A stretch of DNA of 64,000 nucleotides. Source: Mytilus edulis (taxonomy: Eukaryota). How positions within the stretch are numbered: the first letter of the stretch is position 1; every line of letters starts with the position of its first letter. Position numbers and translations under genes: made by a program. The DNA lies in assembly GCF_963676685.1 (NCBI RefSeq), contig NC_092352.1:61380001-61444000 (forward strand). The letters are read 5' to 3'. Of the stretch, positions 2,280-41,864 are shown one piece after another. The notes beneath the pieces are model-generated. The model saw only the letters and a program-made list of their open reading frames with translations, ran no database searches and was not told where the DNA came from.

Positions 2280-5200
2280 ATGAAGTATCAAATCATACTT
2301 TTTTTTTGTTTTGGAATAAGATATTCCTCTCAATTAGATCATCTCTGTTATGATAAGTTTACAAAGTAAGTGTCTATTATATCAGGGAAAATTTAAGTTC
2401 ATTCTCATCATGTTAGAACAAATATTTCCTTACGCAATCGACAATTTAACATTGACAATTTCGAGTTTTTGATGGGGTTCGTTAGTTTAAACTAATTTTA
2501 TTTTGTGTGCTAAAGCAAAATGGATTTGTTACAAGTAAATCACACTTATGCAGTATTTTCCATAATACAATATAAATTACAATAGTAGTATAATCCATAA
2601 ATGGGGCTCGTGTTACTAAGTCTTCAGTTTTCTAAGTTGTGTTATGTATGCTATTGTTTGTCTTTTTCTGTTTGGTCAGTTTATTTTCGACTAACGAAAA
2701 AACAGTCCACTGGTATATTTCGCCTCTCTGTTACCTTTATAGCACACTTGAGAAATTAAAAAAAACCCAACATTTTCAACCTTTGATTTAAGTTGGAACA
2801 TCCTAGTTATCATTTTTAATATTCAACTTGATAGTGTGGAAATTAATTCTGCGATCGATGTCTCTGTGACATCATGAACATGTAAAAATATAAAAACATT
2901 ATGACAGTAACTGCATTGCGAAAAAGTATAAATTCACACACTGTATGTCTCTTATCGTGATTAAAAACAAATTTGCTGCAATCAAGTAAATTCAAATATT
3001 AGTGAGTTGAACTTATAAAAGTTTCTAGGTTAATTTTTTGGTATATTATTGTGAGGGATGTACAATCATACTCGGCTCTATCAACAATATGACATCCTAG
3101 ATGTCACTGCGTATATGTAAACTAAAAGTTTAAAAGAAATATATATACTATGATATTATGTCAAAGCCATTTACACCGTCATATACAGGATGTTTTCAAA
3201 ATTTCTAATGGTACATGAAAAAATTCAAAGCTTTACTGTTTACATGAATCGTCTGTTATGTTCAATGGTGAGGGAAGTTATAGATGTTGTAAAGATGGCA
3301 GACTGCAGATACCGCAATGATATATTGTGTTCTGCAAAGATTTGTAGGGACATAGTATCCTATTTTAGTGATCCCATAAAAATTGAATATTCTTTAACGT
3401 CCTTGTTTATGCTAACCTGAGCCAAATGGCTTTAGATTTGTATGGGTTACAAACAAGGCAGCACATATTGAATGTATTATGTCTTATTACAGTATTAAAG
3501 TTCAGAAATATCATTCCAACGAGAAAGTTTTAAGGTCCTTAAATATATTTTTTTATCACTCCAGACGTCGTGACGTATGCTGCGATAACTACGAATGGAT
3601 TAACCGAAAGTGCACCAGTAAGTTTCATGTAAACCACTTTTGACTTTAAATTGTGCGTCAACATTGATACCACTCAGCAAATACTACTGTTGTACACAAC
3701 AGATTTCTGTTTGCAATTTTTTCATTCAAACTGGAACTATTTCAAATAATACACCGGTTTTCTTTTTGCATGGCGTTCTCAGTTTATTTTCGACGTATGC
3801 GTTCAAATGTCCCTTTGTAATCGGTCGCCTCTATTCAATCTAAAGATTTGTTGAACTAAATTCCAATTAAAAGACAACTTCGAGGTCAATCATGCAGCAC
3901 AAACCCTAGAAATATGTAAGAGGAAAAAACGGAAGTTATATTAATGTCATTGTTCTCACTTACCCTACATGGATTGGGTAGTGATTGATATTGATGTAAT
4001 TATTGATTTTTTTTTTATCCCAATTATAGTTTTTATATTGATAAATCAACAGGTAAATATGAAGTTGACTCTTTAATGCACACAGGTCACTATGACGGCC
4101 ATGTTGAACACCTGTTGAAATGAAATGCCATTTTACTCATTATAGTCATTTGTAAATACAAAATGTATACTGTAGATATATTTGCCAGATCTAAATGTTT
4201 GGGTCATTTACATTGCTTGTGGTATTACATAAACCTGAAAAGTCTGAATAGAACATATAATTAATTGGTAATGCGTTCCAATTACATGAAGCAAAGGTGC
4301 CTTACTTACATGGAATTGACAATCCACGATATTTTCCTTTTTTCTGTCATAGTTCCTAAATATGTATACTAGGATGCACTATTGATTTTCAATTTATAAG
4401 TGAATTTCGTTGAATGTTTTTCAAACGTCAATTAAGCTACATATTCACATTAACAAAATACAGAAATTGTATTAACAAATATCTAAATGTAGCTAAGTAA
4501 ATGGTACATTATTTTCCCGTAATTATGCAGGTAAATACACGCAAAATGTTATCGTTACATGTATGGCAATTCGTCAAATACTTCTTTTTTCTGAGAAAGT
4601 ATTATAACATTTAGTAATACTCGTATTGCAGTTTGATTTAGACAAAGTTATAGCAGCCTATTCAAAAGACAAAATAAAATCCCCATTATATTTAGCTTCA
4701 AACAAAATGCAAAAAGTAAAATTAAGAGAGAAGAAGAAACACAAGACGAATAACATTATGCTTTCATGGTACTATAAATTGTAAGGGATTGACAAACTAT
4801 CTGATTTATAAATTAGAGTGCAAAATTGGAACGACTGCGGAGGCTGGAGGTCGATGTTTGTCATGCCAAAATGACACGTATGGTGAGAAGTGCGGTAAGA
4901 AGTGTGATTGCAATCAGACACAGAGGTATATCTATATGTTTAAAGTTAAAATCTAACATCGTCACTTACACATGTAACATAAAAAACTTTTATTATTTTC
5001 ATATTTAACTTTCATTGACTCCCTCTTGCTTTTATTGTGAGACACCAATTTAACATGTTTTTTGGTTAGATTATTGTAGAAACTCATTTAACTCACAAAA
5101 GATTGTCCGATTTAAGTTTGAGTACATTTCGTTGAATAGAAGTATGTAAACACGGCATCAGACCAATGTTCTAAAACTCAATTCTTCTGCATTTGACTCA

Positions 5201-8200
5201 GCTCACCATCTGGGCTGTAATCAAAATTGGCTGAAAGCCGTATCCGAAACGCATTGAAACAAAATTTTAAACAATATGTACCAAATACGACTAAGCATAA
5301 ATGTTCATGCGGGATACAACAATTTTTAAGCAGCATAATTAATAGCTTAATGTTTATTTTCTTATACTTAGACAGTCAGCTTATTGCTGCGTCGTTTATA
5401 CTTCCAGGTTAGGTTCATTTATACCATCTTTTGTACTGCAACCTTATTGTTTTATTTTAAATTCGTAATAACATGACACAGGATGACTACAATATTAAAA
5501 TCAACTGATCGATTATTTTCACTACAGGTGTGATGCTATAGTCGGGTGCATTCCAAACACTAGCACCTCTACAATAAAAACTACATATACAGGTAAACGT
5601 TACCACCATTCAGTACTTCGAAGCTTTGTTGTGCTGATGGTTCACACAATTGGTTTATTTTCGTTTGTTTTGTTAAAGCTTTGATACATATTATTATTAT
5701 TAGAGAAAAAATAGCAATTTATACTGTAATCATTTTTTTCTGTTTACTAAGATGAATACTAAAATACCATATTCTGCTGAGTTTGTTTCAAACTGCAATG
5801 CATTTCTTTTTTATTTTACATTTGTTTTATCAAACGTAAAGTAAAAGACATGTGACAAGTATAATTGGTATACACAAAATCTTCTTCCACAGAACTTTCA
5901 ACGTGGTTGTTTTGATAAGATGAGCTAAACGAACCAACGCCTGTGTAACATTTACTATTAATAAAACAAACAAAATTATAAACATTGAACACCTCTCGAT
6001 AACTAAAAAGAATGTTCCTATCAAACCCTTTGGTGAAATCGGGTGCTCATGACACATTGTGAGTGTATTTACAAGTGACAGCCGTCAATACTCCTGCTTA
6101 TAATCTTAAACTGTATCTATTTTTTTTAATACACCTGTGACGTCACGTTTGCGGCATCTATCGATGGATCGATGGTTAGTTACCACTTCGGTGTTGACAT
6201 GAATATCAATCATATGGTAATTTTTATATTTTTTTAATAAAGGCAAGGATAAATTATTCTAAATATTGAGGAATGTCTTGTCCCAGGCATGGATAACCTT
6301 AGCCGTATTTAGGACAACTTTTTGAACTTTTGGTCATCAATGGACTTCAACTTTACTTGACTTTCTTTACTATTGAGCTGAACGTCACTGATGAGTCTTA
6401 TATAGACGAAACACGCGTCAGCGTATTAAATTATAAGCCTGGTATCTATGATACCTATTAGAATGTCGAAATGTCCTTGTTTTGTTCATTTGTGAATTTC
6501 TCTATCCTGAATGTTCTTGCATTTATTTGTACAGTAGTCCTGTCATGTAATGTTGTCATTTAAGTGTTTTATCTAACATTTCCATAAAAGCACGAGGTCC
6601 AGCAGAGGAGCCTTACTTACATGAAATTGCCTCTTCATGTTATATCCCTTTTTGCTTCAGATCTCCTGAATGTATCATACATCATACATCATACAATATC
6701 GGCTTTCGATTTATTAGGTTTCAAATGCGGGATTATTTGGATGCAAAAAAATTAATTAAAAAAATGTATTACATGGGTATAAATCAAATATAAGAATGTG
6801 AATCAAATCGGTGAAAAAGAATTTGACAGCTAGTGCCCCTTTAAATGAATCAATGATTGATTATATATCATGTTTACGTGACGTTAAGTAGGCAGATTTA
6901 TAAATCATAATGACAGTACCTGCATGAATTACGCCTGTTTATCGATATCGGCGCACAATACGTGAAATTAAAATATATACCAATCGAAGAATGCAAGTTT
7001 TGGTTACGCGCAATCGACTTTATTAAAAAATCAATTAATCTTAGTAAAAAAGTTAAATGCAAAATAAAGGGGGGAATTTAAGCATTAAATAATTTTGCTT
7101 TTGAAAATATTCTTAAAATACCCAGAAGCAGCAACTGTTATAATATGTATAACAAGTGGTAGGTAAACCAGAAAAAGGGTCATAGTATTTATATACTCAT
7201 AAGTCTAAACGTATCACTCTTCAAATATAGGGCTGCATCATATGCAAAAAAAAAAAAATATTAAGTCTTGCATGCAAATTGATGACTTTTTGTATGAATT
7301 GTTTTTTTGTAGTGACACATCTTTAAGTTAATAGATGATAGTCCAAACGAAAGCTTCCGTGTTCGTGGTATCTTTTTTTGCAAACCAACGTATTGCATAG
7401 CGGCGCAAAACTGGTGATAGTAAAATAAAAAAGCTAGCGCATGTTATGATTATGTGTATCCCTTTTATCGTTTTTCAAACACCAAATCAAAAATGAAAAG
7501 AAATGTTTTACACATTAAATATTATCTCTACAGGACCCATTGAACCAACTTTACTTCCGAATGAAAAAGACACTTCAAATGAATCAACATTAACAAGGAA
7601 TGGTAAGCAAAAACACATGCAAATGATTATTATTGTTGTTTCTCGATTTTCTGATGAGTTTAATCAATCTTGCATTTAATTAACATAAGAACATACTATT
7701 GGTTGACAGAAAACGGTCTTATACTTAAAGATGCAATTATATAGTCTGCTATATGAATATACGTATGTAATTAGTCTAAACATTTTTATTTATAATGGAT
7801 TGCATTGAGAAACAAGTTTTGCAACTTATATTAATCCCTTTTCACTTTACGGGTGCCAGTACTGCCTTGTAGCGGCATTAGCCTGCTCTTTCCGAATCTA
7901 CAAGGGTGTCTTTAACGTGCATGAGATATGGCCCTCTCTGAACACGGGTAAGCCATTTATCGATTATACAGATGTTATTGCTTTCAAGATCGATACACAT
8001 AAATTAATCATTGTGTTATTTTCAAGACGATAGGGTCAGAAAAATATCGGACTAATGATCAACTTTATCCCACGGTATATGTGATATCAAAGAAAAAAAG
8101 TAAATGTGTGTGAGTTTGTATTTGCATGTGAAATAAGATATATATATTTTTTTATATTTGAACCATTATATTGTATTTATTCTTAGTAATCATTATTTCA

Positions 8201-11200
8201 GGAGCTCCTGATGACTGGATAATTTATACACTGTGTATTACTAGTTGTTTCTTTGTTACTGGCTTTGGACACCTTTTTCGTATATACATAAAACGTCGAT
8301 CACAAAAAGTTGGAATCATCAAGAAAAAAGGTATCCCGGAACCTTTCACGTCATCTATTGGTGACTTTAATCAAGAAGACAAGACGCCAATACAATTTGT
8401 AACGACGGGATCAAATGTAACACCCAAAGCATCTCATGAGGACACTATTAACTTTGTTTGTCATGAAAGACAATCTTACATAACATTGATGAAGATGATG
8501 AAGATGGTAATTTTGACCTTTATTTCGATATGAAGGAAGACGTTGATCACCAAGTAGAACACCATGCATTACAAAAGGAATGCCTTTCAACAAGTTCTTT
8601 CAACTCAATCGTTGTTAGTCAAGATAAAACAGAAATTGATGAACCGCTATCAGATTATTGCCAGGAAGATGCACATGCGTGTGAGGTATCCGTTACGGTT
8701 CATGAAAGACAATCTTATACAGCATGTAATGAAGATGATGGAGTTGATGAAGCTGGATATTTTGATCTTTATTTTGATATGAAAGAAGACGTCAATCACG
8801 AAGTAGAACACCATGCATTGCCACATAAAAGCCTTTCAAATAATTCTTTTAACTCAAACGTTGTTAGTAAAGATAATACAGAATTTTATGAACCGCTATC
8901 AGGGTATTGCCAGGAAGATGCACATGCGTGTGAGGTATCCGTTACCGTTCATGAAAGACAATCTAATATAGCATGTAATGGAGATGATGAAGTTGAAGAA
9001 GCTGGATATTTTGATCTTTATTTCGATATGAAAGAAGACGGCAATCACCAAGAACAACACCATGCATTGCCACAGAAAAGCTTTTCTAATAGTTCTTTTA
9101 ACTCAAAAGATGTTGGTCAAGATGATACAGAGTTTCTGAAACCGCTTTCGGAATACTACCAAGGAGATTTAGATGCGTGTGAAGAATCTCTTTCGGTTAA
9201 TCAGTGCATCGAACGTTCTTCATTGTCTAAAGAAGACACTGCAAGCAATGTATATGTTAATGTGTACCAACTGCTGCAAAATGATAGGCAAAAGAATAGT
9301 TAGCTGGCGAATGGAAACCGGCTGTCTCCAGATAGTTATTCAGCTCGTGATAAACACTGAAGAAAGCCATTCCATCACGATATCGAACAAGTTATTCACA
9401 GTATTGCACAAACAAGTATGCTGAATCGGAGATAACGATTAATGCTTGTGGTTCAATTGAATCTAACAATGACAAATCAATTACTGAGGAAAAGTCGAAG
9501 ACAATTTAAAAGTAAACACTTCGAAGATGAGTAAGCAGAAAATCTTTCGAACATTCTGTTTTTTTATATCCTAAACGAGATGCAAGTATAAGATTTTAAT
9601 AATGTAAGAACATGTTTGTGTTTGTATTATTGACTTCTAATCATCATCAATTCGGTTGCTTTTATATGTAAAGAAAAAATTAAAAACATATTTTGTTGTA
9701 TATCAAATGTAAATCTTGTAATCGAGGTTGACATTGTGACACAGACTGATTGAAAAGGACTTTAAACTTATCATTCTTTATTCAATAATGTATGTGTGCA
9801 ATGTTTTATTAAGCCTTATAGTTTTCTAGAAATAAATTTAACTTAACATGGTTAATGTCTCATTTGATTCAATCAAATATTAAGAATACAATATATTTTG
9901 AAAATAGTTTGAAAACATGTCACTTTTACGTGTCACGGTTTAACAGTGCCGCAACATCATATTGATTCACATCGTATACATGACCTCTGGATACCCGTTT
10001 TACTTGAAACATTTTACTTTCCGATTGTGCACTTTGTAAAAAGCATTTTTATACACCTTTTACCTAATTCAATAACCAAATAACATCTTTTTATAGTAAG
10101 GTTGTTTAATTGAAGGGGAGTATTAAATACTATCCTGATTTTCATTTTTTAAGAACACACTTTAAATCATAACTTGTGTAATGCCTAGCTGAAAGAAAAA
10201 CTTTAAGGATGTACACCTCTGAGAATTCAAAAATTTCTAGAATAAATCTTTTTTTCTTAACCTGATTTTTGGGTTTATAAGACTGTAACAAAATAATTGG
10301 TGAAGAAAAAATCATATGGTGGTGCACTTCTTTTTTAGCTACGGCCCTTTAAAAATGCCCAATTTTGATGATTTTCCCATTTTTCATCGATTTTTACCTA
10401 TTTTATTGAAAAAAAAACCACAGTTCCACAATTAAACTTTTTTCATACTTTCTATAAAGATGAAGTGGACCAATCTAAATAAATTTTACTTAAAAAAAAC
10501 TATAGGTAGGTGTTAATATAAAAAAGTTTTATAATATTTTGACGCTTTTTGGTGTAAAATTTACCATGCTGTCAATTTTGTATTTTTGTGATTTTTCTCA
10601 GTTTTAAGAACAAAATACATATTATTTCAACTTTTTTGTTATAAATAATTGAAAAAATACATATCTAAGAAATTTGAAAAGACCAAAATGATAGGGGATG
10701 TACAAGATTCTTGAAAAATAATTTTTTGTATCCCTCACCCATTTTCTCAAAATTTGGGCTAAAAATACAGACTTGATTGGTCGTAAAATTTGAAAACTTG
10801 ATTACTCAAAAACCATTCATTGTAAATACACAAATTTTTCACAGAGTTATGTTTGATAATAATATTTTTAAAATTCATTGATATTTTCCACTTGTATAAC
10901 ATGTTTTGGAAATAATTCAAGAACGAGATTTCAACGAGACTGAACGAGACTGAAAAGTCAGAAGAATACACCCTTAAATCGAAATTTGTGTACTGCTAAG
11001 CTGAAAGAAAAACATAGAATCGATAAAATAATATTCATTGACGGTATTTAAATCAGAAAATGCTAATTTCAAGGCTGTTTATGTCGTATAACACATCTTG
11101 AAGTGTCACTATTGTCAAAGAAAGAACAGTTGACGGTCAATCATTCATTTGATAAATTCTGACACCACTCGATATGTTAAGGACAAGAAATACCATCTTT

Positions 11201-14200
11201 CCTGGAATATAATGGGAACAAAATAACAGCCAGCATTGCATTATTTAAACAATAGCGGCACAGCATTAGTGGTAGCAAAATTAGAAAGAATTCGGATTAA
11301 TGTTATGTTATGTTATGCTATGTTTTTTTTTTTTTTTAACTTAATCAGGTATAAAACATGCAAAAACAATGTTTGTAACCATTAGACAATTCCTCTGTAG
11401 GGAATACTGAACCAGCAATACTTCTGAATAAAACAATCACTACAAAAGAAACAACGGTTATGAACAGTGGTAAGTACAATCACACATATTTTGTTTGTGC
11501 GTCACCTTCGAATAAAATAAATCATTGCATGAAAATTTCTAAATATCATTAGATAAACAGATGATATATTCTTCAAAACGTAAATGTATTGTGCTCTAAT
11601 AATAACTGGTCGATATATAAATTAAAATAGAAGTCTTAGAATAAAAGCGAAATATACCAATGACCTTTTAGCGAAAAGGCAAATAACTGTTTACAAAACA
11701 CAACATAGACAAACTAAAAGGAAACAAACACCTTCACAACCGGAGTGATCGTCTGTGCTCTGCAAGTGCTAGCAGATAATGCTCCAAGTGGAACCTTTCG
11801 TGTTGTTCTCAAATAAATGTCCTTTTATTGAAAATATAGAAATATCTCATATACAGATAATATTCTGAGATTGCTCTGACGCTAATGGCATTCTATAGTA
11901 GTTATTCGGATTGTTGGATGTCAGAGCGCAGTATATATAAATTATATAATTGCCGATCATGACTGAAGGCGGCCAGTTATGTCTAGAGATAGAGACATAT
12001 CCATTTACCAGCAGAATACATTTTCGCTCTCATTAATATTTTTCATCTTCAAGCATGTTTATTCTATTCAACGACTACCATCTGATAGCACAGACAATCG
12101 CTGTATTCTAGTAGGCTCTTAGTTCAGGATCTATCCTGTCATTTTGATCAAATTATGACTGCGTTATGGCATTTGATGCAAATATATTTGCTGATGTAAT
12201 TGTATATGTAAAGCCGTCGTTGAATCACAAAGGTAATCACGATTTTCTTCCTCCACTCAAATACAAACGACTCGTTAACCAACTCATTTGCATAAAGAAG
12301 CTCAAATGAGTACAAATAGTTCAAAGAAATAACGATACTTTGCAGTGATAAGCATGCGCTTATCATGTATTGGTATGAGGAATGACATTGTCATTTATGC
12401 TAATGGGTTGTAGTCGGGCAATAAAAAAGTACATATTTGTGTAAAAAAATAGTGATATAACGAAATATCATAAAGGATTTATCTGCTTACACAAAATCTT
12501 TAAAGTTATCTAAACATCTACTTGTCACTGCAAGTGTCGGCGATTAACATATTTTATATGGAATGAGTTCTGAAATTCAGCGGACTAAGCGATCCATACA
12601 TTAGTCTTCCGGACTAAACATTATACCACTTTGTGTCAACTATGTTGTGAAAACAAAACGATATGGACATGCTAAACAATATCAGTTTTCTACGTATGAC
12701 ACTCTCTGACAATATGAAATATGTGTTTAAAAAATTCCGAAAGGTAATTCACCAGAAGAACTGTAAAAAGGTAAAAAGTTCATCCACCAAGAAAAGTGAT
12801 GTAAAGTAAAAATAAAAGATGTTGTATGATTGTCAAGGAGACAACTGTTCACAAAAGACCAAATGGTACAGAAATTATCAACTATAGGTCACACAGAACG
12901 GACTTAAACAATGAACAAAGTCAATACGGCATAGTCAGCTATAAAGGCCCAGAATGACAAATTTAAAGCAGTTCAAACAAGCAAACTAACTGTTAATTTA
13001 TGTATAAAAAACGATAACCTCTGAATTATTGGCTACTGACAGGCATATCATGCATCATAAACTAGATAAGCAATCATTGCACATCCCACTTCTTATAAAT
13101 TTGTTGTAAAGACGTCCTAAAAGATCAGAGAAAAAATGTGACCTTGTGCAATGCCAATATACAGGTCCATGAGAGTGTATTTGCATGTGTTATTAGGCTC
13201 ATACACTATTTTAACAGTTATTGATATGTTTTAATATAATTGAAGGAACGGCAATATCAGAATGGATCATTTTGACAATATGTATAACCGGTTGTTTCAT
13301 TATGGCTGGTTTTGGTTATTTGATTTGTACATTCAGAAAACGACTGTTTATGGAATCAAGAATCACAAATGAAGACGTGATATTAGAACCCTTAGAACCT
13401 TCTCCTTATTTTGGCGTCTATGATGAGATTGATGAGAATCCATTAACATTTGACACGACGGATATAAACGTACCATCACAAGAATCTCATTACGAAACTA
13501 TTGATATGGTTTCTCAAGAGAGTCTTTCTATTGCAACCAGTTCTGAACATGGTGACACAGGATACCTCGATCCTTATTTCACAATAGAAGAGGATGAAAA
13601 TTACCAATTGCAAGATAAAACATCACAGGCAGAATGTAGTTCATTTAATTCGTCCAACGAAGACGGTGTAGATCAAGACAATAAAGCATATAACAATCTA
13701 TATCAACCACTTCAGGAGAATTGGCAACTAGATTCACATGGTTACGAAGTCCCTGTGATGGTTCATAAGAAATTCAAAATTTCTGCAAATGAATATGTCA
13801 CAAATAATGCATCTTATAATCATGATAATGTGAACAATCCACTACAAAAAGACAGGTATATGAACAATCCCACATATGAAAATCAGAAGTTTCAAGAAAC
13901 AAAAGCAGGCAATGATAAAACATTGGTTGGAGATGATTCATCATATGTATTAAAAATTGGAAACGTACATGATTACATAAACATGAAAGCTGAATCTAAT
14001 ATATCAATGATTAATTGTCATACAGTGGAATCGTGCAAACCGACTGATCGAGACAAGTCAGCGGCAACTGAACAGAAATCATTTCGTAGTGAAATTGATT
14101 TAAAAGATGAGTCAACGAAAGCAAATTCAAACAAAATATATTTAAACAAAATATATCGGGACGAAAATGATAGTAACTCGAACAGTTATGAAGACGCCAA

Positions 14201-14213
14201 ATCATGTGTTTAA
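2280..14213 (+). CDS. Receptor gene 1, isoform B: spliced type I membrane protein (signal peptide, EMI/EGF-like Cys-rich ectodomain, Thr-rich stalk, TM, Tyr-motif tail), 449 aa
   Basis: Exons 2280-2365 (MKYQIILFFCFGIRYSSQLDHLCYDKFT), 3565-3617 (RRDVCCDNYEWINRKCT), 4817-4925 (CKIGTTAEAGGRCLSCQNDTYGEKCGKKCDCNQTQ), 5528-5592 (CDAIVGCIPNTSTSTIKTTYT), 11401-11469 (NTEPAILLNKTITTKETTVMNS), 13246-14213. All introns are GT-AG with phases 2,1,2,1,1. Total 1350 nt, open throughout. Exon sizes and phases match the paralogs. Confidence 0.8.
6382..6424 (+). ncRNA. Minimal type I hammerhead ribozyme within a degenerate retrozyme-like repeat (about 6165-6460)
   Basis: acgtca CTGATGA gtc ttatata gac GAAA c acgc g TC| agcgt. 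Core at 6388-6394 and 6408-6411; the 3' strand of stem I is damaged. Confidence 0.75.
7534..9303 (+). CDS. Receptor gene 1, cassette A: stalk exon 7534-7602 plus TM/tail exon 8202-9303 carrying a 1-nt frameshift near 8486
   Basis: Exon 7534-7602 (PIEPTLLPNEKDTSNESTLTRN, cag|...|gtaagc) is in phase with exon 4. The exon from 8202 gives GAPDDWIIYTLCITSCFFVTGFGHLF (TM), homologous to the other TM exons. The frame stops at 8533 (237-aa isoform), while the homologous tail continues in the 8488/8530-9303 frame. Confidence 0.7.
8462..9190 (+). repeat. Coding tandem triplication, 249-bp (83-aa) unit, inside tail A
   Basis: Units begin catgaaagacaatct at 8462, 8701 and 8950. Protein unit HERQS...G[YN]FDLYFDMKED...HHAL...EPLS.Y.Q. 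Unit 1 is 239 nt, 10 nt shorter than unit 2, which gives the frameshift. Confidence 0.9.
10207..10973. mobile_element. Probable TTAA-flanked MITE
   Basis: ttaa|ggatgtac ... atacaccc|ttaa; short imperfect TIR. Confidence 0.45.
13246..14213 (+). CDS. Terminal exon B of gene 1: TM helix plus acidic cytoplasmic tail
   Basis: ORF 13221-14213 with acceptor tgaag|G at 13245/6. TM WIILTICITGCFIMAGFGYLICTF followed by RKR. Motifs YDEI, SHYETI, YLDP, YQPL, YEVP, NPTYEN, YINM. Confidence 0.88.
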
Positions 14214-14933
14214 ATTGTGTTTGATTATAAATAATCACAAAAATTAACCAATCAATCAGTTTACATGTCATGTTCTGTATATAATTAATAATGATTCGTA
14301 CTTCATTTGTACTTATGATGACAACACTATAAGTAGTGTCTGTATGTGGTATTTGAACATAACTGAAATTATCCGTAGTCGGAAAGGAGGTATACCTTTT
14401 TTTAACTTGTGTGTTACTTATATTTGATTAATATTAAAGCATTTCCGACTGCTTTTTAATTATGCACATATTTGGCCATACTTCAATCCAAAAGTTTAGT
14501 AGTAGGATCACTGTTCTCAACTATATGTTTACACTTTTCAGACCAGAAGCTGCACCGGAATAACTTTCAAAAATGTTTGAATATTTTCTTACAGAGAGTT
14601 GGAAGAAAAATTAGTAGGTTTTAGAACTTAGAAAAATAGTAAGGAACCTTGTTTTTGAATGACACATATAAATGATTTTCGTATTTTTGGGATATATTGT
14701 ATTAATTTGATATATTTGACCGTTTCTCTTACTTTGGACTATATCCATACTGTATGTTGCCCTCAAGAAACTAATTGTTCTTTAACTGTTTGCTCGTTTC
14801 GGTTGTTTTCTAATATCTTTTTATTCCTCGATAAAACATACCACACTAGCCTTTTTTTAGAAATACCAATTCTCAAGTACTCAAGAAGGGTTAGCAGACT
14901 CTACTCAACATGTGACATCCATCATGTTACTCA

Positions 14934-16477
14934 TTTTTGTCGAGCCTGCAACTTTTGTTGCAGAAAGCTCGACATAGGGATAGTGATCCGGCGGCGGCGG
15001 CGGCGGCGGCGACGGCGGCGGTGTTAGCTAACTTCTTAAAAGCTTTATATTTTAGAAGGTGGAAGACCTGGATGCTTCATACTTCGTTTATAGATGCCTC
15101 ATGTTACGAAGTTTCTGTCAGTCACATGTCCAATGTCCTTGACCTCATTCTCATGGTTCAGTGACCACTTGAAAAAAAAGTTCAGAATTTTTGTAATGTT
15201 GAATCCTCTCTTATTATAAGTAATAGGATAACTATATTTGGTATGTGCGTACCTTGCAAGGTCCTTATGCCTGTCAAACAGTTTTCACTTGACCTCGACC
15301 TCATTTCATGGATCAGTGAACAAGGTTAAGTTTTGGTGGTCAAGTCCATATCTCAGATACTATAAGCAATAGGGCTAGTATATTCGGTGTATGGAAGGAC
15401 TGTTAGGTGTACATGTCCAACTGGCAGGTGTCATCTGACCTTGACCTCATTTTCATGGTTCAGTGGTTATAGTTAAGTTTTTGTGTTTTGGTCTATTTTT
15501 CCCATACTTTGTGCAATAAGTCTACTATATTTGTTGTATGGAATGATTGTAAGGTGTACATGTCTAGCGGGCAGATGTCATCTGACCTTGACCTCATTTT
15601 CATGGTTCAGTGGTCAAAGTTAAGTTTTTGAGTTTTGTTCTTTTTATCTAATATTATATGCCAAAGGTCAACTATATTTGGTGTTTGGAATTATTTTATG
15701 ATCTATATGTAAGTCCCGCAGGTTTTATTTGACCATGACCTCAATTTCACGGTTCATTGCACAGTGTTAAGTTTTTGTGTTTTGGTCTGTTTTTCGTAAA
15801 CTATAAGTAATAGGTCAACTATATTTATTGTATGGAAGCATTGTTAGCTGTACATGTCTGCCTGGCATAGTTCATCTGACCTTGACCTCATTTTCATGGT
15901 TCAGTGGTTATAGTTAAGTGTTTGTGTTTTGGTCTTTTTTTCCCATACTTTGTGCAATAAGTATACTATATTTGTTGTATGGAATGATTGTAAGGTGTAC
16001 ATGTCTAGCGGGCAGATGTCATCTGACCTTGACCTCATTTTCATGGTTCAGTGGTCAAAGTTAAGTTTTTGAGTTTTGGTCTTTTTATCTAATATTATAT
16101 GCCAAAGGTCAACTATATTTGGTGTATGGAAATATTTTATGATCTATATGTAAGTCCCGCAGGTTTTATTTGACCATGATCTCAATTTCACGGTTCATTG
16201 CACAGTGTTAAGTTTTTGTGTTTTGGTCTGTTTTTCGTAAACTATAAGTAATAGGTCAACTATATTTATTGTATGGAAGCATTGTTAGCTGTACATGTCT
16301 GCCTGGCATGGTTCATCTGACCTTGACCTCATTTTCAAGGTTCATTTGTCTTTGTTTAACTATCTTGGTTTATGTTAAGTTTATGTGGCAGTTGTTAAAG
16401 CTTTATACTTAGGACTATCAACATAATATCAATGATTAGTAAAGAAGGCGAGACATTTCAGTGTGTGCACTCTTGTT
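14934..16477. mobile_element. Non-autonomous Helentron-like (HINE / pearl-type) element with an internal ~147-bp satellite array
   Basis: 5' hairpin GTCGAGC..TGCAACttttGTTGCA..GCTCGAC, then a (GGC)n microsatellite at about 14989-15020, about 9 monomers containing tgaccttgacctcattttcatggttca, a subterminal inverted match aggcgagaca, a 3' palindrome agtgtgtgcact, and T-rich ends. Confidence 0.75.
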
Positions 16478-23513: not shown

Positions 23514-25091
23514 AAAGAGGGACGAAAGATACCAAAGGGACAGTCAAACTCATAAATCTAAAACAAACTGACAACGCCATAGCTAAAAATGAAAAGGACA
23601 AACAAACAAGAGCACACACGACACAACATAGAAAACTAAAGAATAAACAACACGAACCCCACCAAAAAACTAGGGGTGATCTGAGGTGCTCCGGAAGGGT
23701 AAGCAGATCCTGCTCCACATGTGGCACCCGTCGTGTTGCTTATGTGATAACAAATCCGGTAAATAGTCTAATTCGATAGGTCACATTCATGAAAGGGAAG
23801 GGAATTGTAGTTACGACGTAAGGAACATATCCGATATCATTTGTGAAACGGTTATTCCATAACGGTTAACCAACTCGTTATGGCGTCCGTAAAATTTACG
23901 AAGGGATGATTTCAACTTCACCATTTGGAACTCTTGGTTTAATAGCTTCCTTGTGAGCAGCAACCCTCTATCAAGAAAATCATGATAGGAAATGCAAGCA
24001 CGGGAATATCGTATCAGTTGGGAGATATATACCCCGTATGCAGGTGCTGCTGGAATGTTGCTACTTAGAAATGGAAAGTTCACAATTGGAAAGCTGAAAT
24101 CATCTCTTTTGTCGTAAAGTTTTGTTTTCAACCGACCCTCATTGTCAATTTCTAGATGTAAGTCAAGATATGAGGCCGACTTAACTGTATCTGTAGTATC
24201 CTTTATATCTAGCTCGATTGGATAGATGCGTTCCACATAGTCACCAAATTTTGAATTATTTAGTTAAAGAACATCATCTATGTAGCGAAAAGTAGAGTTA
24301 AAGGATATTGCTAACTTCTTATCTTTCTTCCTAAGAAGTTCTTGCAAGAAGTCAGCCTCATAATAATAAAGAAACACGTCGGCAAGTAGAGGGACACAGT
24401 TTGTTCCCATTGAAATGCCGACAGTCTGTTGAAAAACACGTCCTCCGAACGTAACAAATATGTTGTCAATCAAGAAATCAAGCATCTTGATGATATCAGT
24501 TTCAGAGAATTTTTTGTTCGAATCAGAGTGATCCTTTACAATGTAGGATTTATCCCTCCCTAAGACAAGATACTTGTATCTACGTTGGCCATTCTCTTTT
24601 ACGAAGCAAAGCAATACCAACTCTTTGAATTTGTCTTTTAGTTTGGAATGTGGAATACTAGTGTAAAGAGTAGAAAAGTCAAATGTTTTAATACTGTTAC
24701 ACGATGAAAGAGAGTTAGATTGTATGTACTCTAAAAGATCTATGGAATTTTTAAGTATCCACATCTGATTCACGCCCCCTCTAGAATAGGCAGTTTCACA
24801 ATAACTTTGAAGCCCGCCTGTGATTGCTGATAAAATAGATGTTAATAATTTCGAAAGAGGTTTTGTGGAGCACTTGGAAGACCCAGCAATATACCGTTGT
24901 TTGTAAGGACACTTATGTAGTTTAGGTATCCAATATAGTGATGGCAGATCCAGTTCTTCATCTTTGGTTGAAATTCCAAAGGAACACAGAACAGACCTAT
25001 GATTATCCAGGATTTCCTCTTTGGTAAGTGTCGTGAGGGTATATGTTGAGTTTCCAAGTGAATTGTAAATACCTAATTCGTTTATCAAGCA
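23514..25091 (-). mobile_element. 5'-truncated Penelope-like retroelement (probably Naiad-type): reverse transcriptase pseudogene plus 3' UTR
   Basis: ORFs 24264-25190 and 23811-24236 are in the same frame, separated by one TAA. PLE-type RT motifs LYWIPKLHK, FDFSTLYT, GISMGTN, FRYIDDVL, YLDL, LYDKRDDF, SQLIRYSRAC. No GIY-YIG domain follows the RT. The 3' UTR at 23810-23514 recurs across the window. Confidence 0.85.
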
Positions 25092-27642
25092 GTTATCTAT
25101 GCCTGGAATAAGAAAATCCTTAGTTTTTCGAAAAATTCGAAGTTTTGTAAACAGGAAATTTATAAAAATGACCACATTATTAATATTCATGTCAACACCA
25201 AAATGTTTACTACTGGGCTTGTGATACCCTCGGGGACGAAACGTTCACCAGCAGTGGCATCGACCCAGTGGTTTAAATAGTTATCAAAGGTACCAGGATT
25301 ATAATTTAGTACGCCATACGCTGCAGACACCAGACGCAAAAACTGCAATTAAACAGTTAAATAGAAAATAGACAAACATATTCCAAATAAAACTATGAGT
25401 GAAAACAAAATTCTCATTAAAAGTGGGTGATCCACTGAATGGCAAACAATTCCTTCTACGTGTGAGAGGTTAAGTTTAAAGCAAAGCAAGTTTAAAACAT
25501 TATGAAAGATCCAATTTGGTGACAGCTAAATGATCCTTATCCTAGAAGTTCAAAAATGATTTAATGGTCTGTTTCCACACTTAATGATAGATGCAATTGA
25601 TTTGGTCTCAATCATTTAAAAGTGGTTCAAAGTAAATGACACAAATATCGAACTTGAAGTTAAATTCAAAACGGAAAGTCCCTTAACAATTGGCGAAGTC
25701 AAAAGCTCAAATGCATGCAAACAAATGGAGAGCAACTGTCATATTCCTGACTTGGTACAGGCATTTTCTTGTGTAGAAAATGGTGAGTGTAGCCTGGTTT
25801 TAAAGCTAGCTAACCATTTCGAAACGTCCACCAGCAGTAGCATCGATCCAGTGGTGTGAATAGTTGAATCAATGGTACCAGGATATTGAATATAATATTG
25901 AAAAAAATAAAGTTCAGACATCTTTTGGCGGTCTCGTGCTGTAACTTGAGTACATGCTTGGTTCTAATACGTGTATAAAATATTTATATACTGTCGAAAC
26001 ACAATCAACCATATAAGGCACCTTAGGATATATTTTACCAAATAAAATGTTGGATCGACTAGCCTATATTTTTCAGACAAGTCGTTTTTGGTTCTTTTTA
26101 AGATGATTTAGTTGGTGCTTAAGTTTATGAATCAAAAAGACCTTACAAGAGTTGAAATTCAACATACAGATTTGTGCTTCTATTTTTTTAACACAATGTC
26201 TTTGTTTTGTTTTTTATATATATATATTATGACAATAAGTATAAGAATATTTAGTAAGTATGAAAAGGATTGAAATAATTTGAATTAACTATTTTCAATG
26301 AATAACCTTCTTAAACACGTGTGTTCTAATAAAGTAGGCTTTATACGTTAACATCTAAACATGTGTTGATCTGCTATATTTAATATACACCTTGCATAAC
26401 TTTGTAATGAGTCATAATTATTTTAGTAAAATATATATAAGATATATAAGATGAGAGACCTGGAATGTCATATAGAGGGAAAAGAGGGCACCCTCCTAAT
26501 ATTTTTATTTTATAAATATATTTTATAAGTCTGCTTATTTTAGCTATGCAGTGTAGGGGATAGAAATCTTTATGTACATTACAACTGTTCGCGAAACGGT
26601 TACTTGAAATAGCTGCTTGAAAGTATAACCAATTTTATTTGCTAATTGAAAATCAAGCGGAATAAAATAATTTAAGACAGCAGAGAAGATAATTCTGTTT
26701 TAATTGGTTATTTTTAACCGACTTAAATAAAAGAGTCAGCTTTAAATACTGTAAATGTATGATGTCTCTAGTTTGGTCAAAGGTCAGAGTGTCCTACTTA
26801 ATTAAACGATAAATTGTTGAAATTAGATAACATGTTTTCACGTGCAGAAAAAAATCACTTATGACCAATGCATGATTGGATATCATCTTTCTTATTGGTC
26901 AATGATCTTGCGGGTCAGTACGAGTTCACGTGTAAGTGTATTGTGGTCACTTCCTTTTATCATCAGCATTTGATGTGTTAACTTGTGATTCTTATCAAAC
27001 AATTTGTTCAAAATTCCCACCCACATACCGCCCTTATTGTTATATTTTGAAGTAGATATCTATATATGTTTATTTATGGGGCAGATTTTTCTCCCCACCT
27101 TTGCTATTCTTTGTCATTTATTCAATTGACATGATATTAGTTGATGTAATTTCGTATTAATTATGTATTATTATTTCATATGAAATATGAACTTTTATGT
27201 CAAATGTTTTATTTGCAAAATGTATTTTTTGCATTTTATGATTTTGAATAAATGACCTTTTTTCGTCAGTTTAGTTTTTATATCATAAAGCAAATCAAGC
27301 TCAGACTCTGGCATGTGTATACATAGTATGTTTATGGTATCTAGCTGTCTGTCTTAAAAACAAGTAGACGTAAAATTATGTGTTATCAATACGAAAAAGA
27401 TCTACGTGAAATTAATTCCAAGTTGCAGCTAAAAAATCATCCGAATACGTTTTGTTATAACTCCCGGGTGCTGGGAATTCGTATTGCTCCGCCTTTAGTG
27501 TGCTGGATTGAAAAAGTTTTCATATGATATTTAATCTTTTTCTATTGTTTATAGATTGTTTAAATATTCTAAGTTTTTGATCCAAGCACCACTGTCCTTT
27601 GTAGACAAATCGCACGTCTGGATTTTAACATAGTATTCAGTG

Positions 27643-29885: not shown

Positions 29886-32800
29886 ATGAAGAACCTAGTG
29901 ATTGTGTTACTTATTTGTGGAATTATAAATTCAATGGACGGGATTTGTATCAACAACGAAGGGTTAGTTTCAATTAATGTCAAGTAACATTTAAACAAGA
30001 CATATCACCTTGTATGATCACTTTTAAACGCATTAGATCAATCACATTGTTCTATCTCAAAAGTAAAAAAAATAAAAATACCGAACCCATAGGAAAATTA
30101 AAAACTCAGACACATCATATGAATGGAAAATAACTGTCAAATTCTTGCCTTTGCATTGTCTCATGAAGAAAAAGAAAACCGTGGTTCAATATGGTTTGAA
30201 AATTCAGATTTTGTCATGATATTTATCACCTACATGTATGTCAACAAAAAAGAACCAAACTAATTAAGTTAAAAACGTAACGATAGAGATAAATCCATTT
30301 GATTCAAAAGCTGTTCAGATATATGTTAAATGGCATATAGAACTGAATATTAGATTCGAGTACTGTCTGCATGTGGTGTCATTTGTAACTGATACAAAGA
30401 CAAAGTATTTCGGAAACACATAATATGTTGTGACTCTACCTATTGCTTGGATATGCCCGACGAGGCAAAGATGTACAATTTGTACATATGTATATACTTT
30501 GCTGGTTTCGACTATTTAAATGATACTTTACAACTATATTCAGTTTATTCCAAATTTAAATGGAACGGTGAATAACAATTAGACTTTTCATTTAGAGCAA
30601 GGACCCCTTACTACTCAATTGTATATGACAAAAATGAAACTAGCGTAAAATGCGGGCATTATGAAGATATGTACCCCTAAAGAAGAAAATATTAATGTCA
30701 AATTATTTGTACAACTTCGTAAATATTTCTTAATGATGAATACATTGATGATCTCAATAAAACAATGATGCAAACCATAAAGTAAAAAAATTAATGACAT
30801 GTATTTAAATATAAAGTAGAATAATTGTTTCTATTTAACTACTGATTCTCGGGAACCAATTTTGGGAAAATCTAAAATTGTTTACTAATTATAAAGAGCT
30901 GTTTCAGTTTTCAACTTTACTGATGTTAACAGTAACTTTACCACACCTGCTGTACGCTATAAAGGATAGATAATAATGAGGTGAAAAAAGTATTGATGAC
31001 GATATTGATTGTAAATGATTTTTTGGAAATCCTTCTAATATTAGAGATGGCGGTGAGCGATGCAACGATTTTCGTGGTAAAAACGACATTGTACATTATT
31101 CTTTAGAATCGACTCAAGGTCGTATGATACAGAAGACATTCCTCGATGAAAATGTTTAAAATGTTCGACTCAACGTCAATTTCATTGGACAGATCGTCAT
31201 TTCAATATAGACGAATATTTTACTGAAGAAATTATTTAATATCAGTTTTTCACCCTGAGCGATAGCGATTGGTAAAATACGAATACAACGGGGAAACCCA
31301 TAGTTCAACTAAATTTGGATAGTATGCGTTTGCACAAAAGTAGAAATAATATAATTATACTTGTTAATAATAATAGGGGTTGTCATACTAGAATTTCAGT
31401 TATATGTTGTTTTATTTTGTACTGTTTAAAGTAAAGAAGCAAGTTATTATTTCAATATTTCGTTGAAAAATAGCATAACTTTCAATGGACAATATACTTT
31501 CACTCCATTTTTCTTTGTGTTGTAAATATAATTTTACATGCGTAAAGCAGTAACCAATTTTTTTAGTTACAGCGTATATAATAAAACATTCTTGACGCTG
31601 TGCACAATCGATTTCACACAAAAAAATAGAAAAACATCTTATATTTATTGAAATTTGGATAACACTTTGAAACCATAATCGAGTCGATTTCGCAATTAAT
31701 TGAAATGGTGTTCCGCGAAATAACAAGCATTCAGATCAGGAAGTTAAGTTCCTGTTTTGTCTGAGGCGGTATTTTGCACATAATGATGCCTATAAATGCT
31801 GATAACTTCTAAGTTTAAAAAAATATCAGCTTCAATCTTATTTTTTTTTATTAGAAAACTCACATTTATTTCAGTTCTGGTCATTTTTTTTTTTGCATTT
31901 CAGACTTGAAGATTGCTGCCATAACTATGAAGATATCAAGGGTATATGCAGAGGTAAATTACATAATTACTATCGATTGCATACGTATACAATATTAATC
32001 TTGGTCGTTATTGTTGTTAACGGTTGATTTGATTTTTGATTTTTGGAGTTTTAACACCACTTTTAAATACTGCATTTAGGCTACTTCGTGGCGGCCACTT
32101 TTTATTTGCAGAGGAAGCCGAAAAAAAACACCGACCTTCGAAAGAAAAACTGACAATCCTAGTCAATTAAGATTGGAGTCGAGGGCACCCACACGAGCAG
32201 GGTTCGTACTCGCAACCTCAGTGTTGACTAGCTAGTGATTACAGTAGTAGAACTGTTGTTAACAGATAGCCAGTTAACGAGAATACCACAAACGCTCCTG
32301 TACTGGATAGGTTTAGTTTGAATGATGGTTGGGTTCGTGTCATACATTTTTCGGTGAATAAACTTTTTTCCGAAATAAACCGGACACCAAGGCTGCAATC
32401 AAAATAGAAAAAAAAACGAATAAACAGACAAAATCATATTTAAATTAAAACAAAGCGCTGAAAACATCAGTCCCATGTGTGCTCTACTATTAGGTACATC
32501 TAGTTCCTTCAGTGTGTGACAACCTTCGTGTAATCAGTCGTACAATACACATTTGCACCTCACACGTTCGCCCCAATTTTTATTTAAATCCCAATTGAAT
32601 AATTTGATATTTTTTATAAGTATATACCAAAATAAACTGCGAATTGGTATTTGAACTCAGCTAAGTTAGTATAATTGTGTGTGTTTGAAAATCATGATTG
32701 TTGTTTAAACTTGCTTTGATGTAAAATCGGTGTTTTGTGGGTTCTCGATACTCAATCGCTGGTTTCCCGTGTATTGATTTGTAGTCTGTTATCATAATTC

Positions 32801-41268: not shown

Positions 41269-41864
41269 ATCACAACATGCAATTAACATGATTGCTTAAA
41301 TATGCATACTGAATCTAAAATATCAATAAAAAATTGTGATGAAATGGAATCCTGTAAGCCGTTTGATGAGGATAATGTGAGGAGAATTGATCAACACTAG
41401 TTCAGTGGTGACATTCAAAGAGGACTTAACAAACTTGTATTTAAGCAATATATGTTGTTCTCAAGAAGATAATATCAAAAAGGTGAATGATAATAAGCAG
41501 TGGCAAAATCATGCAATTAAATGGGTGTTATATTACATGTACATAGTTATTAGAATAAATTAACCAGTCGGTACCATTATGTACATTTCGAGTACTTTTT
41601 ATATTACATTATGCTTTGTACTTAAGGTGAACATAACTATAATTCGCCTCTGAAGAGCTTTGTTTTAATATAACTTTAGACAATTTCAGACTTCTCATTA
41701 ATTTATATGCAATTTTTATCCTACAAGTTGTGTCCTTGAACGTATACCCAATAAAGGCAACAGTAGTATACCGCTGTTCAAAACTCATAGATGCCAACAA
41801 TGAATACCTTTTAGACTAGTAACTACCCAGTGAGAAACTTCTTAGCAAAAAAAATAGCATAGGC

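What the first reader, a model, noticed from the sequence alone, without database searches (positions are those of the whole stretch)
5528..14213. One ectodomain, two alternative stalk+TM+signalling tails (possible paired receptor encoded by one gene)
Seen: exon 4 (phase-1 donor at 5592) is followed by two complete phase-compatible cassettes, 7534-7602 + 8202.. and 11401-11469 + 13246... I found no signal or Cys exons between 9303 and 11401, so cassette B can only use exons 1-4 of gene 1. The tails differ sharply. A has repeated G[YN]FDLYFDM (YxxL/YxxM) and no NPxY. B has ITIM-consensus SHYETI, NPTY, YxxP and YINM. Known: Drosophila Draper switches between activating and inhibitory tails by alternative splicing. 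Inference: alternative last exons could couple one ligand specificity to different outputs, and inclusion of both 69-nt stalk exons would also vary stalk length in frame.
Basis: partly seen in the sequence, partly recalled or inferred. Interest (0 to 1): 0.8.

Follow-up and report, generated by a model that had tools for sequence, protein, structure and literature searches.

The report
Mussel receptor gene with two tails
A blue-mussel surface-receptor gene is followed by two complete copies of its membrane-anchor-plus-signalling-tail end, but only the first copy is seen spliced, so a single-gene paired receptor is possible and unproven.

Summary
The anatomy is real. Four 5' exons (signal peptide plus a small Cys-rich module, 2280-5592) are followed by two phase-compatible stalk + TM/tail cassettes: A (7534-7602, 8187/8202-9303) and B (11401-11469, 13246-14213). 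No ectodomain-like exon lies between them.

The genome is Mytilus edulis, and the locus sits in a same-strand tandem array of six paralogs on C9.

There are caveats:
- Tail A is frameshifted here at about 8486. Its TM frame stops at 8533, so the repeated Tyr motifs are out of frame. A M. galloprovincialis allele is in frame.
- A and B are homologous full-length tails, not unrelated ones.
- The ITIM match in B is no better than chance.
- Of 19 TM-proximal tail matches genome-wide, only A2 and B2 lie within 5 kb of each other.
- In reads from 4 runs, one contig joins A1 to A2, using an acceptor 15 nt upstream of 8202. No displayed joint enters B1, and one contig runs from the intron into B1.
- No database protein joins the ectodomain to either tail.

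In favour of function, B2 is fully open and keeps the ancestral C-terminus that its close neighbours have lost.

Verdict: a birth-and-death product with a duplicated or orphaned 3' half. Alternative last-exon use is untested.

The parts
2280..2365 (+). Gene 1 exon 1: start codon and signal-peptide-like N-terminus
   Evidence: Translation and GT donor. It is related to exon 1 of paralog g3 at 50386.
3565..3617 (+). Gene 1 exon 2 (Cys-Cys motif exon)
   Evidence: AG/GT flanks and the correct frame. Paralog matches lie at 31902 and 51066.
4817..4925 (+). Gene 1 exon 3: small EGF-like Cys-rich module
   Evidence: Translation. The AG is at 4815-4816. Homologous exons occur in 7 other loci. The Pfam EGF_LMN_ATRN match is only E = 0.041, below the cutoff.
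5528..5592 (+). Gene 1 exon 4: end of the Cys module and start of the Ser/Thr-rich stalk. The donor leaves 1 base.
   Evidence: Paralog exon 4 lies at 36217.
7534..7602 (+). Cassette A stalk exon (69 nt)
   Evidence: AG/GT flanks. It is joined to A2 in one X2 contig (joint 7603>8188, 75 letters on this side).
8187..9303 (+). Cassette A last exon: TM helix and tail. The TM frame stops at 8531-8533. The frame is lost at about 8486. Three ~249-nt modules at 8487-9182 lie in the +1 frame.
   Evidence: The in-frame allele is P0016 = VDI39456.1.
9831..9836 (+). AATAAA after cassette A. The 3' UTR is covered by contigs up to about 9760-9960.
   Evidence: X6 contigs cover 9304-9531 and an X2 contig covers 9559-9760.
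9304..11400 (.). Spacer between A2 and B1. It has no ectodomain-like exon. 10120-11119 is a high-copy repeat and 11321-11338 is a T run.
   Evidence: The segment matches contig C2122 at 92% in reverse orientation.
11401..11469 (+). Cassette B stalk exon (69 nt)
   Evidence: AG/GT flanks. With its flanks it is 75% identical to the g2 stalk exon region 38659-38842. An X1 contig covers 11348-11470 and includes 53 nt of the upstream intron.
13246..14213 (+). Cassette B last exon: TM helix and a 321-codon canonical tail, open to the family's ancestral C-terminus
   Evidence: It is the best genome-wide match to the full-length M. coruscus protein P0007, covering residues 131-450 with no stops. It is 99.7% identical to VDI39455.1.
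14433..14438 (+). ATTAAA, the only canonical-type poly(A) signal within about 800 nt after B2

Best explanation
Gene 1 belongs to a Mytilus-specific family of small single-pass receptors. The family plan is a signal peptide, one EGF-like Cys module, a Ser/Thr stalk, a TM helix and a Tyr-rich tail. The family sits in same-strand tandem arrays that evolve by birth and death.

The 5' half of gene 1 is followed by two homologous 3' halves. Cassette A is the one shown to be spliced and polyadenylated, so I take it as the default terminal cassette. In this haplotype a 1-nt loss truncates its tail.

Cassette B is the 3' half of a B-type paralog that has no 5' exons. I think the most likely origin is a deletion or unequal exchange that removed the neighbour's 5' half. 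B2 is still intact either because that event is recent or because read-through transcripts sometimes splice into B1.

Shown: the anatomy, the homology, the array context, the A1>A2 splice and the frameshift.
Inferred: the origin by truncation, and that B is not a regular second output of gene 1.
For: - Array: six loci on C9, each with one exon 3 and one last exon, except gene 1, which has two last exons. Three C3 loci and C2122 also have one each.
- Genome-wide, 19 TM-proximal tail matches were found. A2 and B2 are 5.0 kb apart and the next closest pair is 21.9 kb apart.
- Cassette B is colinear with the 3' half of g2, intron included: 11352-11530 with 38659-38842, 12421-12754 with 40107-40423, and 13215-14048 with 40541-41367. 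The homology stops 49 nt upstream of B1.
- Decay is common in the array. The g2 tail has 3 stops and g3/C1573 has 2. Exon 4 of g3 was not found, and its RefSeq protein XP_071133295.1 starts in the stalk exon. A2 is frameshifted here. The B2 allele P0033 changes frame inside the TM region.
- Reads: an A1>A2 joint is seen in X2, and contigs in X6 and X2 cover the A2 3' part and UTR. No displayed joint enters 11401. The X1 contig reads from the intron into B1.
- No protein in the 5.8-billion-sequence set joins an ectodomain to B2 (15 hits) or to A1/A2 (1 hit, P0016 itself).
Against: - B2 is stop-free over 321 codons and keeps the C-terminal end seen in M. coruscus full-length relatives. Its close paralogs g2 and g3 lost that end.
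- Under neutral drift the B2 frame would stay open with P = 0.20 at 3% divergence, 0.07 at 5% and 0.007 at 10%. Any orphaning must therefore be recent.
- dN/dS is about 0.5-0.6 against g2 and g3 at dS about 0.55.
- Relatives of B2 at 88-90% identity (P0002, P0034, P0032) are also open.
- In this haplotype, e1-e4 + B1 + B2 is the only path to a full-length canonical protein of about 449 aa, by exon arithmetic.
- The read evidence is thin. Depths are 2-7, 10 joints were not displayed, and the raw RNA run X24 had zero depth on every exon.
Confidence: 0.45

Rival explanations
1. One gene uses alternative last exons, so the same ectodomain is coupled either to tail A or to tail B. The two tails carry different Tyr motifs and hence give different signalling outputs.
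For: All splice phases match and both cassettes have intact AG/GT sites. There are no 5' exons between A2 and B1. Each cassette has its own poly(A) signal. B2 is intact and constrained. The same A-then-B neighbourhood appears in M. galloprovincialis as consecutive gene models, VDI39456.1 and VDI39455.1, on one 466,689-nt contig. In X1, the contig's match to B1 stops at 11470, one base past the predicted donor, and 16 further letters do not match. That pattern would fit use of the B1 donor (those letters were not shown to me).
Against: No joint into 11401 was displayed for any of 4 runs. No spliced protein appears in the databases. The arrangement is unique in this genome. The M. galloprovincialis haplotype is 98.5-99.7% identical at the protein level, so it says nothing about how old the arrangement is. 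Frameshift alleles exist for both A and B. The tails are homologous throughout, and the ITIM pattern is at chance level.
Confidence: 0.3
2. Cassette B is its own transcription unit. Transcripts start in the 9.9-11.4 kb spacer, run through B1 and splice to B2. They would give an ectodomain-less TM + tail protein starting at the Met near the end of B1.
For: X1 contigs cover 11081-11231 and 11348-11470 at depth 2.5-2.8. This is intron-plus-B1 sequence, unspliced at the acceptor. There is a precedent in the family: the RefSeq protein for g3 (XP_071133295.1, 313 aa) begins in the stalk exon and lacks any ectodomain.
Against: X1 is only guessed to be RNA. It also covers A1 together with both of its intron flanks, so it may hold DNA or pre-mRNA. 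The g3 model may simply be the longest ORF of a broken gene, since its exon 4 was not found. No promoter evidence can be obtained with these tools.
Confidence: 0.12
3. B is the native 3' end of gene 1. Cassette A is a partial duplicate of an A-type paralog that landed in the e4-B1 intron, acts as a premature terminal exon, and is now decaying.
For: e1 to B2 spans 12 kb, similar to g3 at 13.3 kb. B2 is intact while A2 carries a frameshift, and a stop cuts off a C-terminal extension that relatives P0018 and P0019 still read. At the protein level, exon 3 is closest to loci with B-type tails: 61-64% to the C3 loci and 62% to g2, against 50-57% to g4 and g5.
Against: At the nucleotide level with flanks, exon 3 is about equally close to C3 (67%), g5 (66%) and g4 (63%), and less close to g2 (58%). 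So the exon-3 tree does not follow tail type. Tail A is in frame in M. galloprovincialis and is the cassette seen spliced.
Confidence: 0.1

Closest known systems
Drosophila Draper isoforms (Draper-I ITAM form, Draper-II ITIM form)
   Same: One engulfment-type receptor ectodomain is coupled by alternative splicing to tails with opposite signalling. An NPXY motif is also present. I read passages of PMC4503800.
   Different: Draper has many EGF repeats, and by my recollection its isoforms differ by internal exon choice rather than by a duplicated TM + tail cassette. Here there is one small Cys module, and Pfam finds no EMI or EGF domain above threshold. There is no ITAM spacing and no junction evidence for the second tail.
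CEACAM1 paralogs in the horse (tail diversification by alternative splicing after gene duplication)
   Same: A rapidly expanding immune-type receptor family in which duplication, followed by stops in the TM exon and alternative splicing, changes or removes ITIM tails. I read the abstract of PMC5856374.
   Different: That is a vertebrate Ig-superfamily family with cloned cDNAs. Here no cDNA shows the alternative form.
Read-through / conjoined transcripts and orphan 3' gene fragments in tandem arrays. This is general knowledge that I recall; I read no paper on it.
   Same: A same-strand 3' gene fragment lies about 1.5 kb beyond the upstream gene's poly(A) signal and has phase-compatible acceptors.
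   Different: Whether read-through splicing happens here is unknown.
Mytilus presence-absence variation and dispensable genes
   Same: A lineage-specific, tandemly arrayed family whose alleles differ by loss-of-function lesions between individuals. For PMC7653742 I saw only the search listing and the start of the abstract.
   Different: I did not test presence/absence of this locus. The supplementary gene lists of that paper, which could say whether VDI39455.1 and VDI39456.1 are dispensable, were not seen.

Membership tests
MEGF10 / Draper / CED-1 receptors (UniRef labels the relatives P0007 and P0013 'MEGF10_11') | EMI domain plus a long series of EGF-like repeats in the ectodomain | tested here: not met
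   Pfam found 0 families for P0007 and P0013. Exon 3 matched only EGF_LMN_ATRN at E = 0.041, 14.4 bits against a cutoff of 27. The ectodomain is about 105 aa with one Cys module.
MEGF10 / Draper / CED-1 receptors | Cytoplasmic NPxY plus YxxL/ITAM motifs | tested here: inconclusive
   B has one NPTY (shuffle P = 0.06) and five YxxL/I (P = 0.06), but no ITAM spacing. NPxY is kept in g2 and g3 but not in M. coruscus P0007 or P0005.
Paired activating/inhibitory receptors | The inhibitory form carries a conserved ITIM | tested here: inconclusive
   SHYETI fits the pattern, but the pattern count is at chance level (P = 0.19). The -2 residue is Pro in g3 and in several relatives, and Tyr is Phe in P0004.
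Paired activating/inhibitory receptors | The activating form has an ITAM or a charged TM residue for an ITAM adaptor | tested here: not met
   Tail A as encoded here is about 110 aa with one YxxL. Its TM stretch has no Lys, Arg or Asp. In the in-frame allele the modules give YxxL/YxxM pairs, not ITAM spacing.
Gene with alternative last exons | Two terminal cassettes downstream of shared exons, each with a poly(A) signal | tested here: met
Gene with alternative last exons | Transcripts joining the shared donor to each cassette | tested here: inconclusive
   A1>A2 was seen once, in an X2 contig. e4>A1 was not resolved: the contig ends 5 letters into an ambiguous match. No displayed joint touches 11401 (10 joints were not displayed).
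Birth-and-death tandem receptor array with partial copies | Same-strand paralogs with a shared exon plan, plus members carrying stops, frameshifts or missing exons | tested here: met

The most novel reading that the evidence does not exclude
A single mussel receptor gene couples one ligand-binding module to two anciently diverged tails (dS about 0.5 or more) by choosing between two complete stalk + TM + tail cassettes. Loss-of-function alleles of either cassette segregate in the population: the A frameshift here and the B TM frameshift in P0033. Individuals would then differ in which signalling output that ectodomain can drive.
Probability: 0.25. Interest if true: 0.6.

Novelty: new member of a known kind. 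Interest (0 to 1): 0.35.

Why it matters
If the B cassette were really spliced to gene 1, this would be a clear invertebrate case of one recognition module wired to two outputs by swapping the whole TM + tail. It would be testable with a few RT-PCRs, and it would bear on how lineage-specific immune-type receptor families diversify in mussels.

On present evidence it mainly shows how birth-and-death evolution in a tandem array can build an alternative-last-exon layout by accident. It also shows that annotation splits or ignores such loci. The M. galloprovincialis annotation has two partial models here. I found no M. edulis RefSeq protein covering either tail within the length ranges searched.

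Tried and rejected
1. I tried to assign the 'native' cassette by exon-3 affinity. The protein and nucleotide comparisons disagree, and the exon is only about 110 nt. This was inconclusive.

2. I compared introns to find duplication breakpoints. Only cassette B is colinear with a paralog (g2). The e4-A1 intron matches nothing except repeats.

3. I considered C2122 as a possible second haplotype of gene 1. I rejected this: it is a separate, diverged family member, with exon 2 at 4889, exon 3 at 5330 and a tail at 7907-8528. C1573 is a near-identical second copy of g3, not of gene 1.

4. Pfam scans of both tails and of relatives gave nothing above threshold, apart from a borderline ITAM hit in the relative P0027.

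5. Database searches for a protein joining the ectodomain to B (15 hits) or to A (1 hit) found none. Length windows were 0.55-1.75 times the whole query protein: 321 aa and the 408-aa P0016. The Logan-derived B2 proteins start inside B2, in intron-derived residues (P0034), or in a shifted frame (P0033), so they are unspliced.

6. Gene models that fuse an A-type tail to a B-type tail exist in other assemblies (P0004 M. coruscus, P0009 M. edulis, P0012 M. galloprovincialis). I considered them as evidence for a conserved A-then-B order. I set them aside because such models can skip small 5' exons and their contigs could not be fetched.

7. A paper search for 'Mytilus' plus 'MEGF10' returned 8 papers, 7 of them listed. 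None is about this family, judging by title and the start of the abstract. A search for bivalve/ITIM/ITAM/alternative splicing/cytoplasmic tail found no bivalve study among the 10 listed. I make no claim beyond these searches.

8. I left the third big protein search unused to save cost. It would have been a full-length family query to look for RefSeq isoform pairs.

9. I did not search or fold a joined spliced model. Exons were handled separately, and protein lengths were obtained by arithmetic on exon lengths.
Full report
**What the sequence shows**

The window is G000:C9:61380001-61444000. Contig C9 is 88,296,451 nt long. That is the contig length recorded for the RefSeq protein XP_071133295.1 of Mytilus edulis (P0008). 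P0008 maps at 99-100% onto the window's third gene. So the genome is M. edulis.

Reading and translating exon by exon confirms the following exons:

| Exon | Coordinates | Note |
|---|---|---|
| e1 | 2280-2365 | start codon, hydrophobic N-terminus |
| e2 | 3565-3617 | |
| e3 | 4817-4925 | AG at 4815-4816; I first set the start one base early |
| e4 | 5528-5592 | |
| A1 | 7534-7602 | stalk exon, 69 nt |
| A2 | 8202-9303 | last exon |
| B1 | 11401-11469 | stalk exon, 69 nt |
| B2 | 13246-14213 | last exon |

All are flanked by AG and GT. All phases fit, so e4 can join A1 or B1, and each 69-nt stalk exon keeps the phase.

By adding exon lengths, the B path would give about 449 aa. The full-length M. 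coruscus relative P0007 is 450 aa and has the same exon-by-exon layout.

No ectodomain-like exon lies in 9304-11400. The best tblastn E-value is 0.13, on a poly-T-coded Phe run, using gene 1's four exons and five family N-termini as queries.

**Caveats to the observation**

The frame that carries the A TM helix ends at 8531-8533. The three 249-nt modules at 8487-9182 (2.8 copies, 85% matches), which hold the G[YN]FDLYFDM motifs, lie in the +1 frame. Repeat 1 has a 10-nt gap relative to the other two, that is nine bases plus one.

The M. galloprovincialis protein P0016 (VDI39456.1) reads straight through. On the window it switches from frame 2 to frame 1 at 8485-8488, at 98.5-99% identity. So this haplotype has lost one base.

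The shifted frame is still open for 257 codons. It would stay open with P = 0.67 at 1% drift but only 0.13 at 5%. The lesion is therefore young, or an assembly error.

**The tails are relatives, not opposites**

The A modules align with the central part of B: GYFDLYF with GYLDPYF, and so on to the ...VTVHE/...VMVHK block, at 31-35% identity. A-type relatives (P0018, P0019, P0023) continue past the point where the window's A2 has its stop, into a C-terminal region that is also homologous to the end of B.

The motif counts in B are not striking for a tail with 19 Tyr. The ITIM pattern occurs twice against 0.81 expected (P = 0.19). NPxY occurs once (P = 0.06) and YxN five times (P = 0.025). Several Tyr sites are kept across paralogs and species (GYLDPYF, YxxLYQPL, HGYEVPV, DYINM). 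The -2 position of the 'ITIM' is not kept.

**Context**

All on the + strand of C9 lie six loci: g0, gene 1, g2, g3, g4 and g5. Each has one exon-3 match and one last exon, except gene 1, which has two last exons.

- g2 and g3 have B-type tails, at 74% and 77% nt identity to B2.
- g4 and g5 have A-type tails, at 64-71% nt identity.
- Three loci on C3, and C2122, each have one exon 3 and one tail.
- A six-frame search of the whole genome with P0007 gave 48 matches. Of the 19 that cover the TM-proximal part of a tail, A2 and B2 are 5.0 kb apart. The next closest pair is 21.9 kb apart. These counts are lower bounds, as the tool states.

The double cassette is therefore a one-off in this genome, not a family design.

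Cassette B is colinear with the 3' half of g2, including an intron segment. That homology begins only 49 nt upstream of B1.

**State of the copies**

- B2 is the best match in the genome to P0007. It covers residues 131-450 with no stops and ends with the same C-terminal motif as M. coruscus P0007, P0005 and P0013.
- The g2 tail has three in-frame stops. g3 and its second copy on C1573 have two and end early.
- C3c has a stop in the TM region.
- Exon 4 of g3 was not found, and its RefSeq protein starts in the stalk exon.
- dS between B2 and g2 or g3 is about 0.55, with dN/dS 0.5-0.6. Changes specific to B2, at sites where g2 and g3 agree, are 32.3 synonymous and 62.7 non-synonymous.
- A neutral B2 would stay open with P = 0.20, 0.07 and 0.007 at 3%, 5% and 10% divergence.
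- One B2 allele from a Logan contig (P0033, 97% identical) changes frame at about 13311, inside the TM region. This may be a real loss-of-function allele or a contig error.

**Transcript evidence**

The look-up of sequencing runs listed 24 runs. 20 hold part of the stretch, and none of those holders is on record as RNA.

I laid X2 and X6 (organism B contigs, guessed RNA), X1 (organism A contigs, guessed RNA) and X24 (raw RNA-seq, organism A) on 5520-11519 at 90% likeness.

- Most depth falls on repeats at 6120-6900, 7720-8119 and 10120-11119.
- X2: one 331-nt contig, depth 4.5, joins 7603 to 8188. It has 75 letters on the A1 side and 256 in A2. This is within one base of a GT..AG pair (7603-7604 and 8185-8186), 15 nt upstream of 8202 and in frame.
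- The five outermost letters of that contig fit both the end of e4 and the intron before A1. So e4>A1 is not resolved.
- X6 contigs cover 8843-9531, and an X2 contig covers 9559-9760. So the part of A2 beyond the frameshift, and the 3' UTR, are present in these runs.
- X2 also has some intron cover (5720-5919; 6925-7015 joined to 7156 and onward).
- None of the 15 displayed joints touches 5592, 7534, 11401 or 11469. Ten further joints were not displayed.
- X1: one 151-nt contig matches 11348-11470 without a mismatch. That is 53 nt of intron plus B1. Its last 16 letters do not match the following intron, which is what a B1>B2 splice would give, but I could not see those letters. Another X1 contig covers 11081-11231.
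- X1 also covers A1 together with both of its intron flanks, by my arithmetic on the depth bins. It may therefore be DNA or pre-mRNA.
- X24 had zero depth on all exon bins.

**Database evidence**

The B2 query returned 15 proteins. Those at 88-100% identity are P0001 and P0002, plus their cluster members P0032, P0033 and P0034. They all start inside B2, in intron-derived residues, or in a shifted frame.

P0001 (VDI39455.1) and P0016 (VDI39456.1) are consecutive accessions on one 466,689-nt M. galloprovincialis contig. So that annotation splits the locus into two partial models. The A model starts in exon 3 in the wrong frame and skips e4.

A search with the A1 + TM part of P0016 returned only P0016 itself. 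So no M. edulis RefSeq protein holding either tail of gene 1 was found within the length ranges searched.

**Reading**

The most economical account is birth-and-death evolution in a tandem array that left one 5' half followed by two 3' halves.

A is the cassette seen spliced, and it lies first. Co-transcriptional splicing and its poly(A) signal (AATAAA at 9831) should favour it; that step is my inference.

B looks like the 3' half of a B-type neighbour whose 5' exons are gone. Its intactness means either that the loss is recent or that B is used.

An independent ectodomain-less transcript (0.12) and 'B native, A intruder' (0.1) remain possible.

**Comparison with known systems**

Draper-I and Draper-II show that one engulfment receptor can switch from an ITAM tail to an ITIM tail by splicing (passages of PMC4503800). 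Horse CEACAM1 paralogs show tail remodelling by stops and splicing after duplication (abstract of PMC5856374).

This family is not a Draper/MEGF10 member by domain content. The 'MEGF10_11' label on P0007 and P0013 is the source's own.

Mytilus is known for gene presence-absence variation (PMC7653742, listing and start of abstract only). Its supplementary lists, which I did not see, might say whether these two models are dispensable genes.

**Verdict**

The interpretation cannot be decided with the data I could reach, and I lean against a designed paired receptor. Interest is 0.35.

Noticed in passing
window 31902-41415 (g2): This paralog has exons 2, 3 and 4, a stalk exon and a B-type last exon. 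The tail has three in-frame stops, the first right after 41268, and alignment to B2 continues past them. It is probably a pseudogene or a truncated allele.
   Followed up: partly
window 50386-63694 (g3) and G000:C1573: This paralog has exons 1, 2 and 3, a stalk exon and a tail, but no detectable exon 4. Skipping a 65-nt exon would break the frame. The RefSeq protein XP_071133295.1 begins at a Met in the stalk exon. A near-identical second copy of the tail lies on the 24-kb contig C1573.
   Followed up: partly
window 23811-25190 (- strand): Two adjacent ORFs of 141 and 308 aa look like a reverse transcriptase.
   Followed up: no
window 14989-15021 and 15290-16344: A (CGG)11 run is followed by a 147-nt satellite (7.2 copies, 76% matches) with a 441-nt higher-order period (95% matches).
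   Followed up: no
window 6120-6900, 7720-8119, 10120-11119: High-copy repeats lie inside the gene 1 introns and the A-B spacer. Summed contig word depth reaches about 55,000, and the raw RNA run also covers them on both strands. The 10256-10978 segment matches C2122 at 92% in reverse orientation.
   Followed up: no
window 7016-7155: One X2 contig skips this 140-nt intron segment, with one other letter in between. It is probably an indel polymorphism in the e4-A1 intron.
   Followed up: no
window 8187-8201: The spliced A1>A2 contig uses an AG 15 nt upstream of the acceptor at 8202 that the M. galloprovincialis model uses. This adds five residues next to the TM helix. The two may be tandem alternative acceptors.
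   Followed up: partly
window 9301-9510: Past the A2 stop, the sequence still reads, with stops, like the C-terminal extension that relatives P0018, P0019 and P0012 translate. So the A tail of gene 1 also lost about 65 C-terminal residues to a stop codon. The M. galloprovincialis allele shares that stop.
   Followed up: partly
G000:C3:37376516 and 37491564: Two B-type family loci about 115 kb apart give identical scores for exon 3, exon 4 and the tail. This suggests a very recent segmental duplication or an assembly duplicate.
   Followed up: no
protein P0027 (family relative, not in the window): This 547-aa family member has two tail modules and a Pfam ITAM hit just at threshold (22.6 bits against a cutoff of 22.2).
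   Followed up: no
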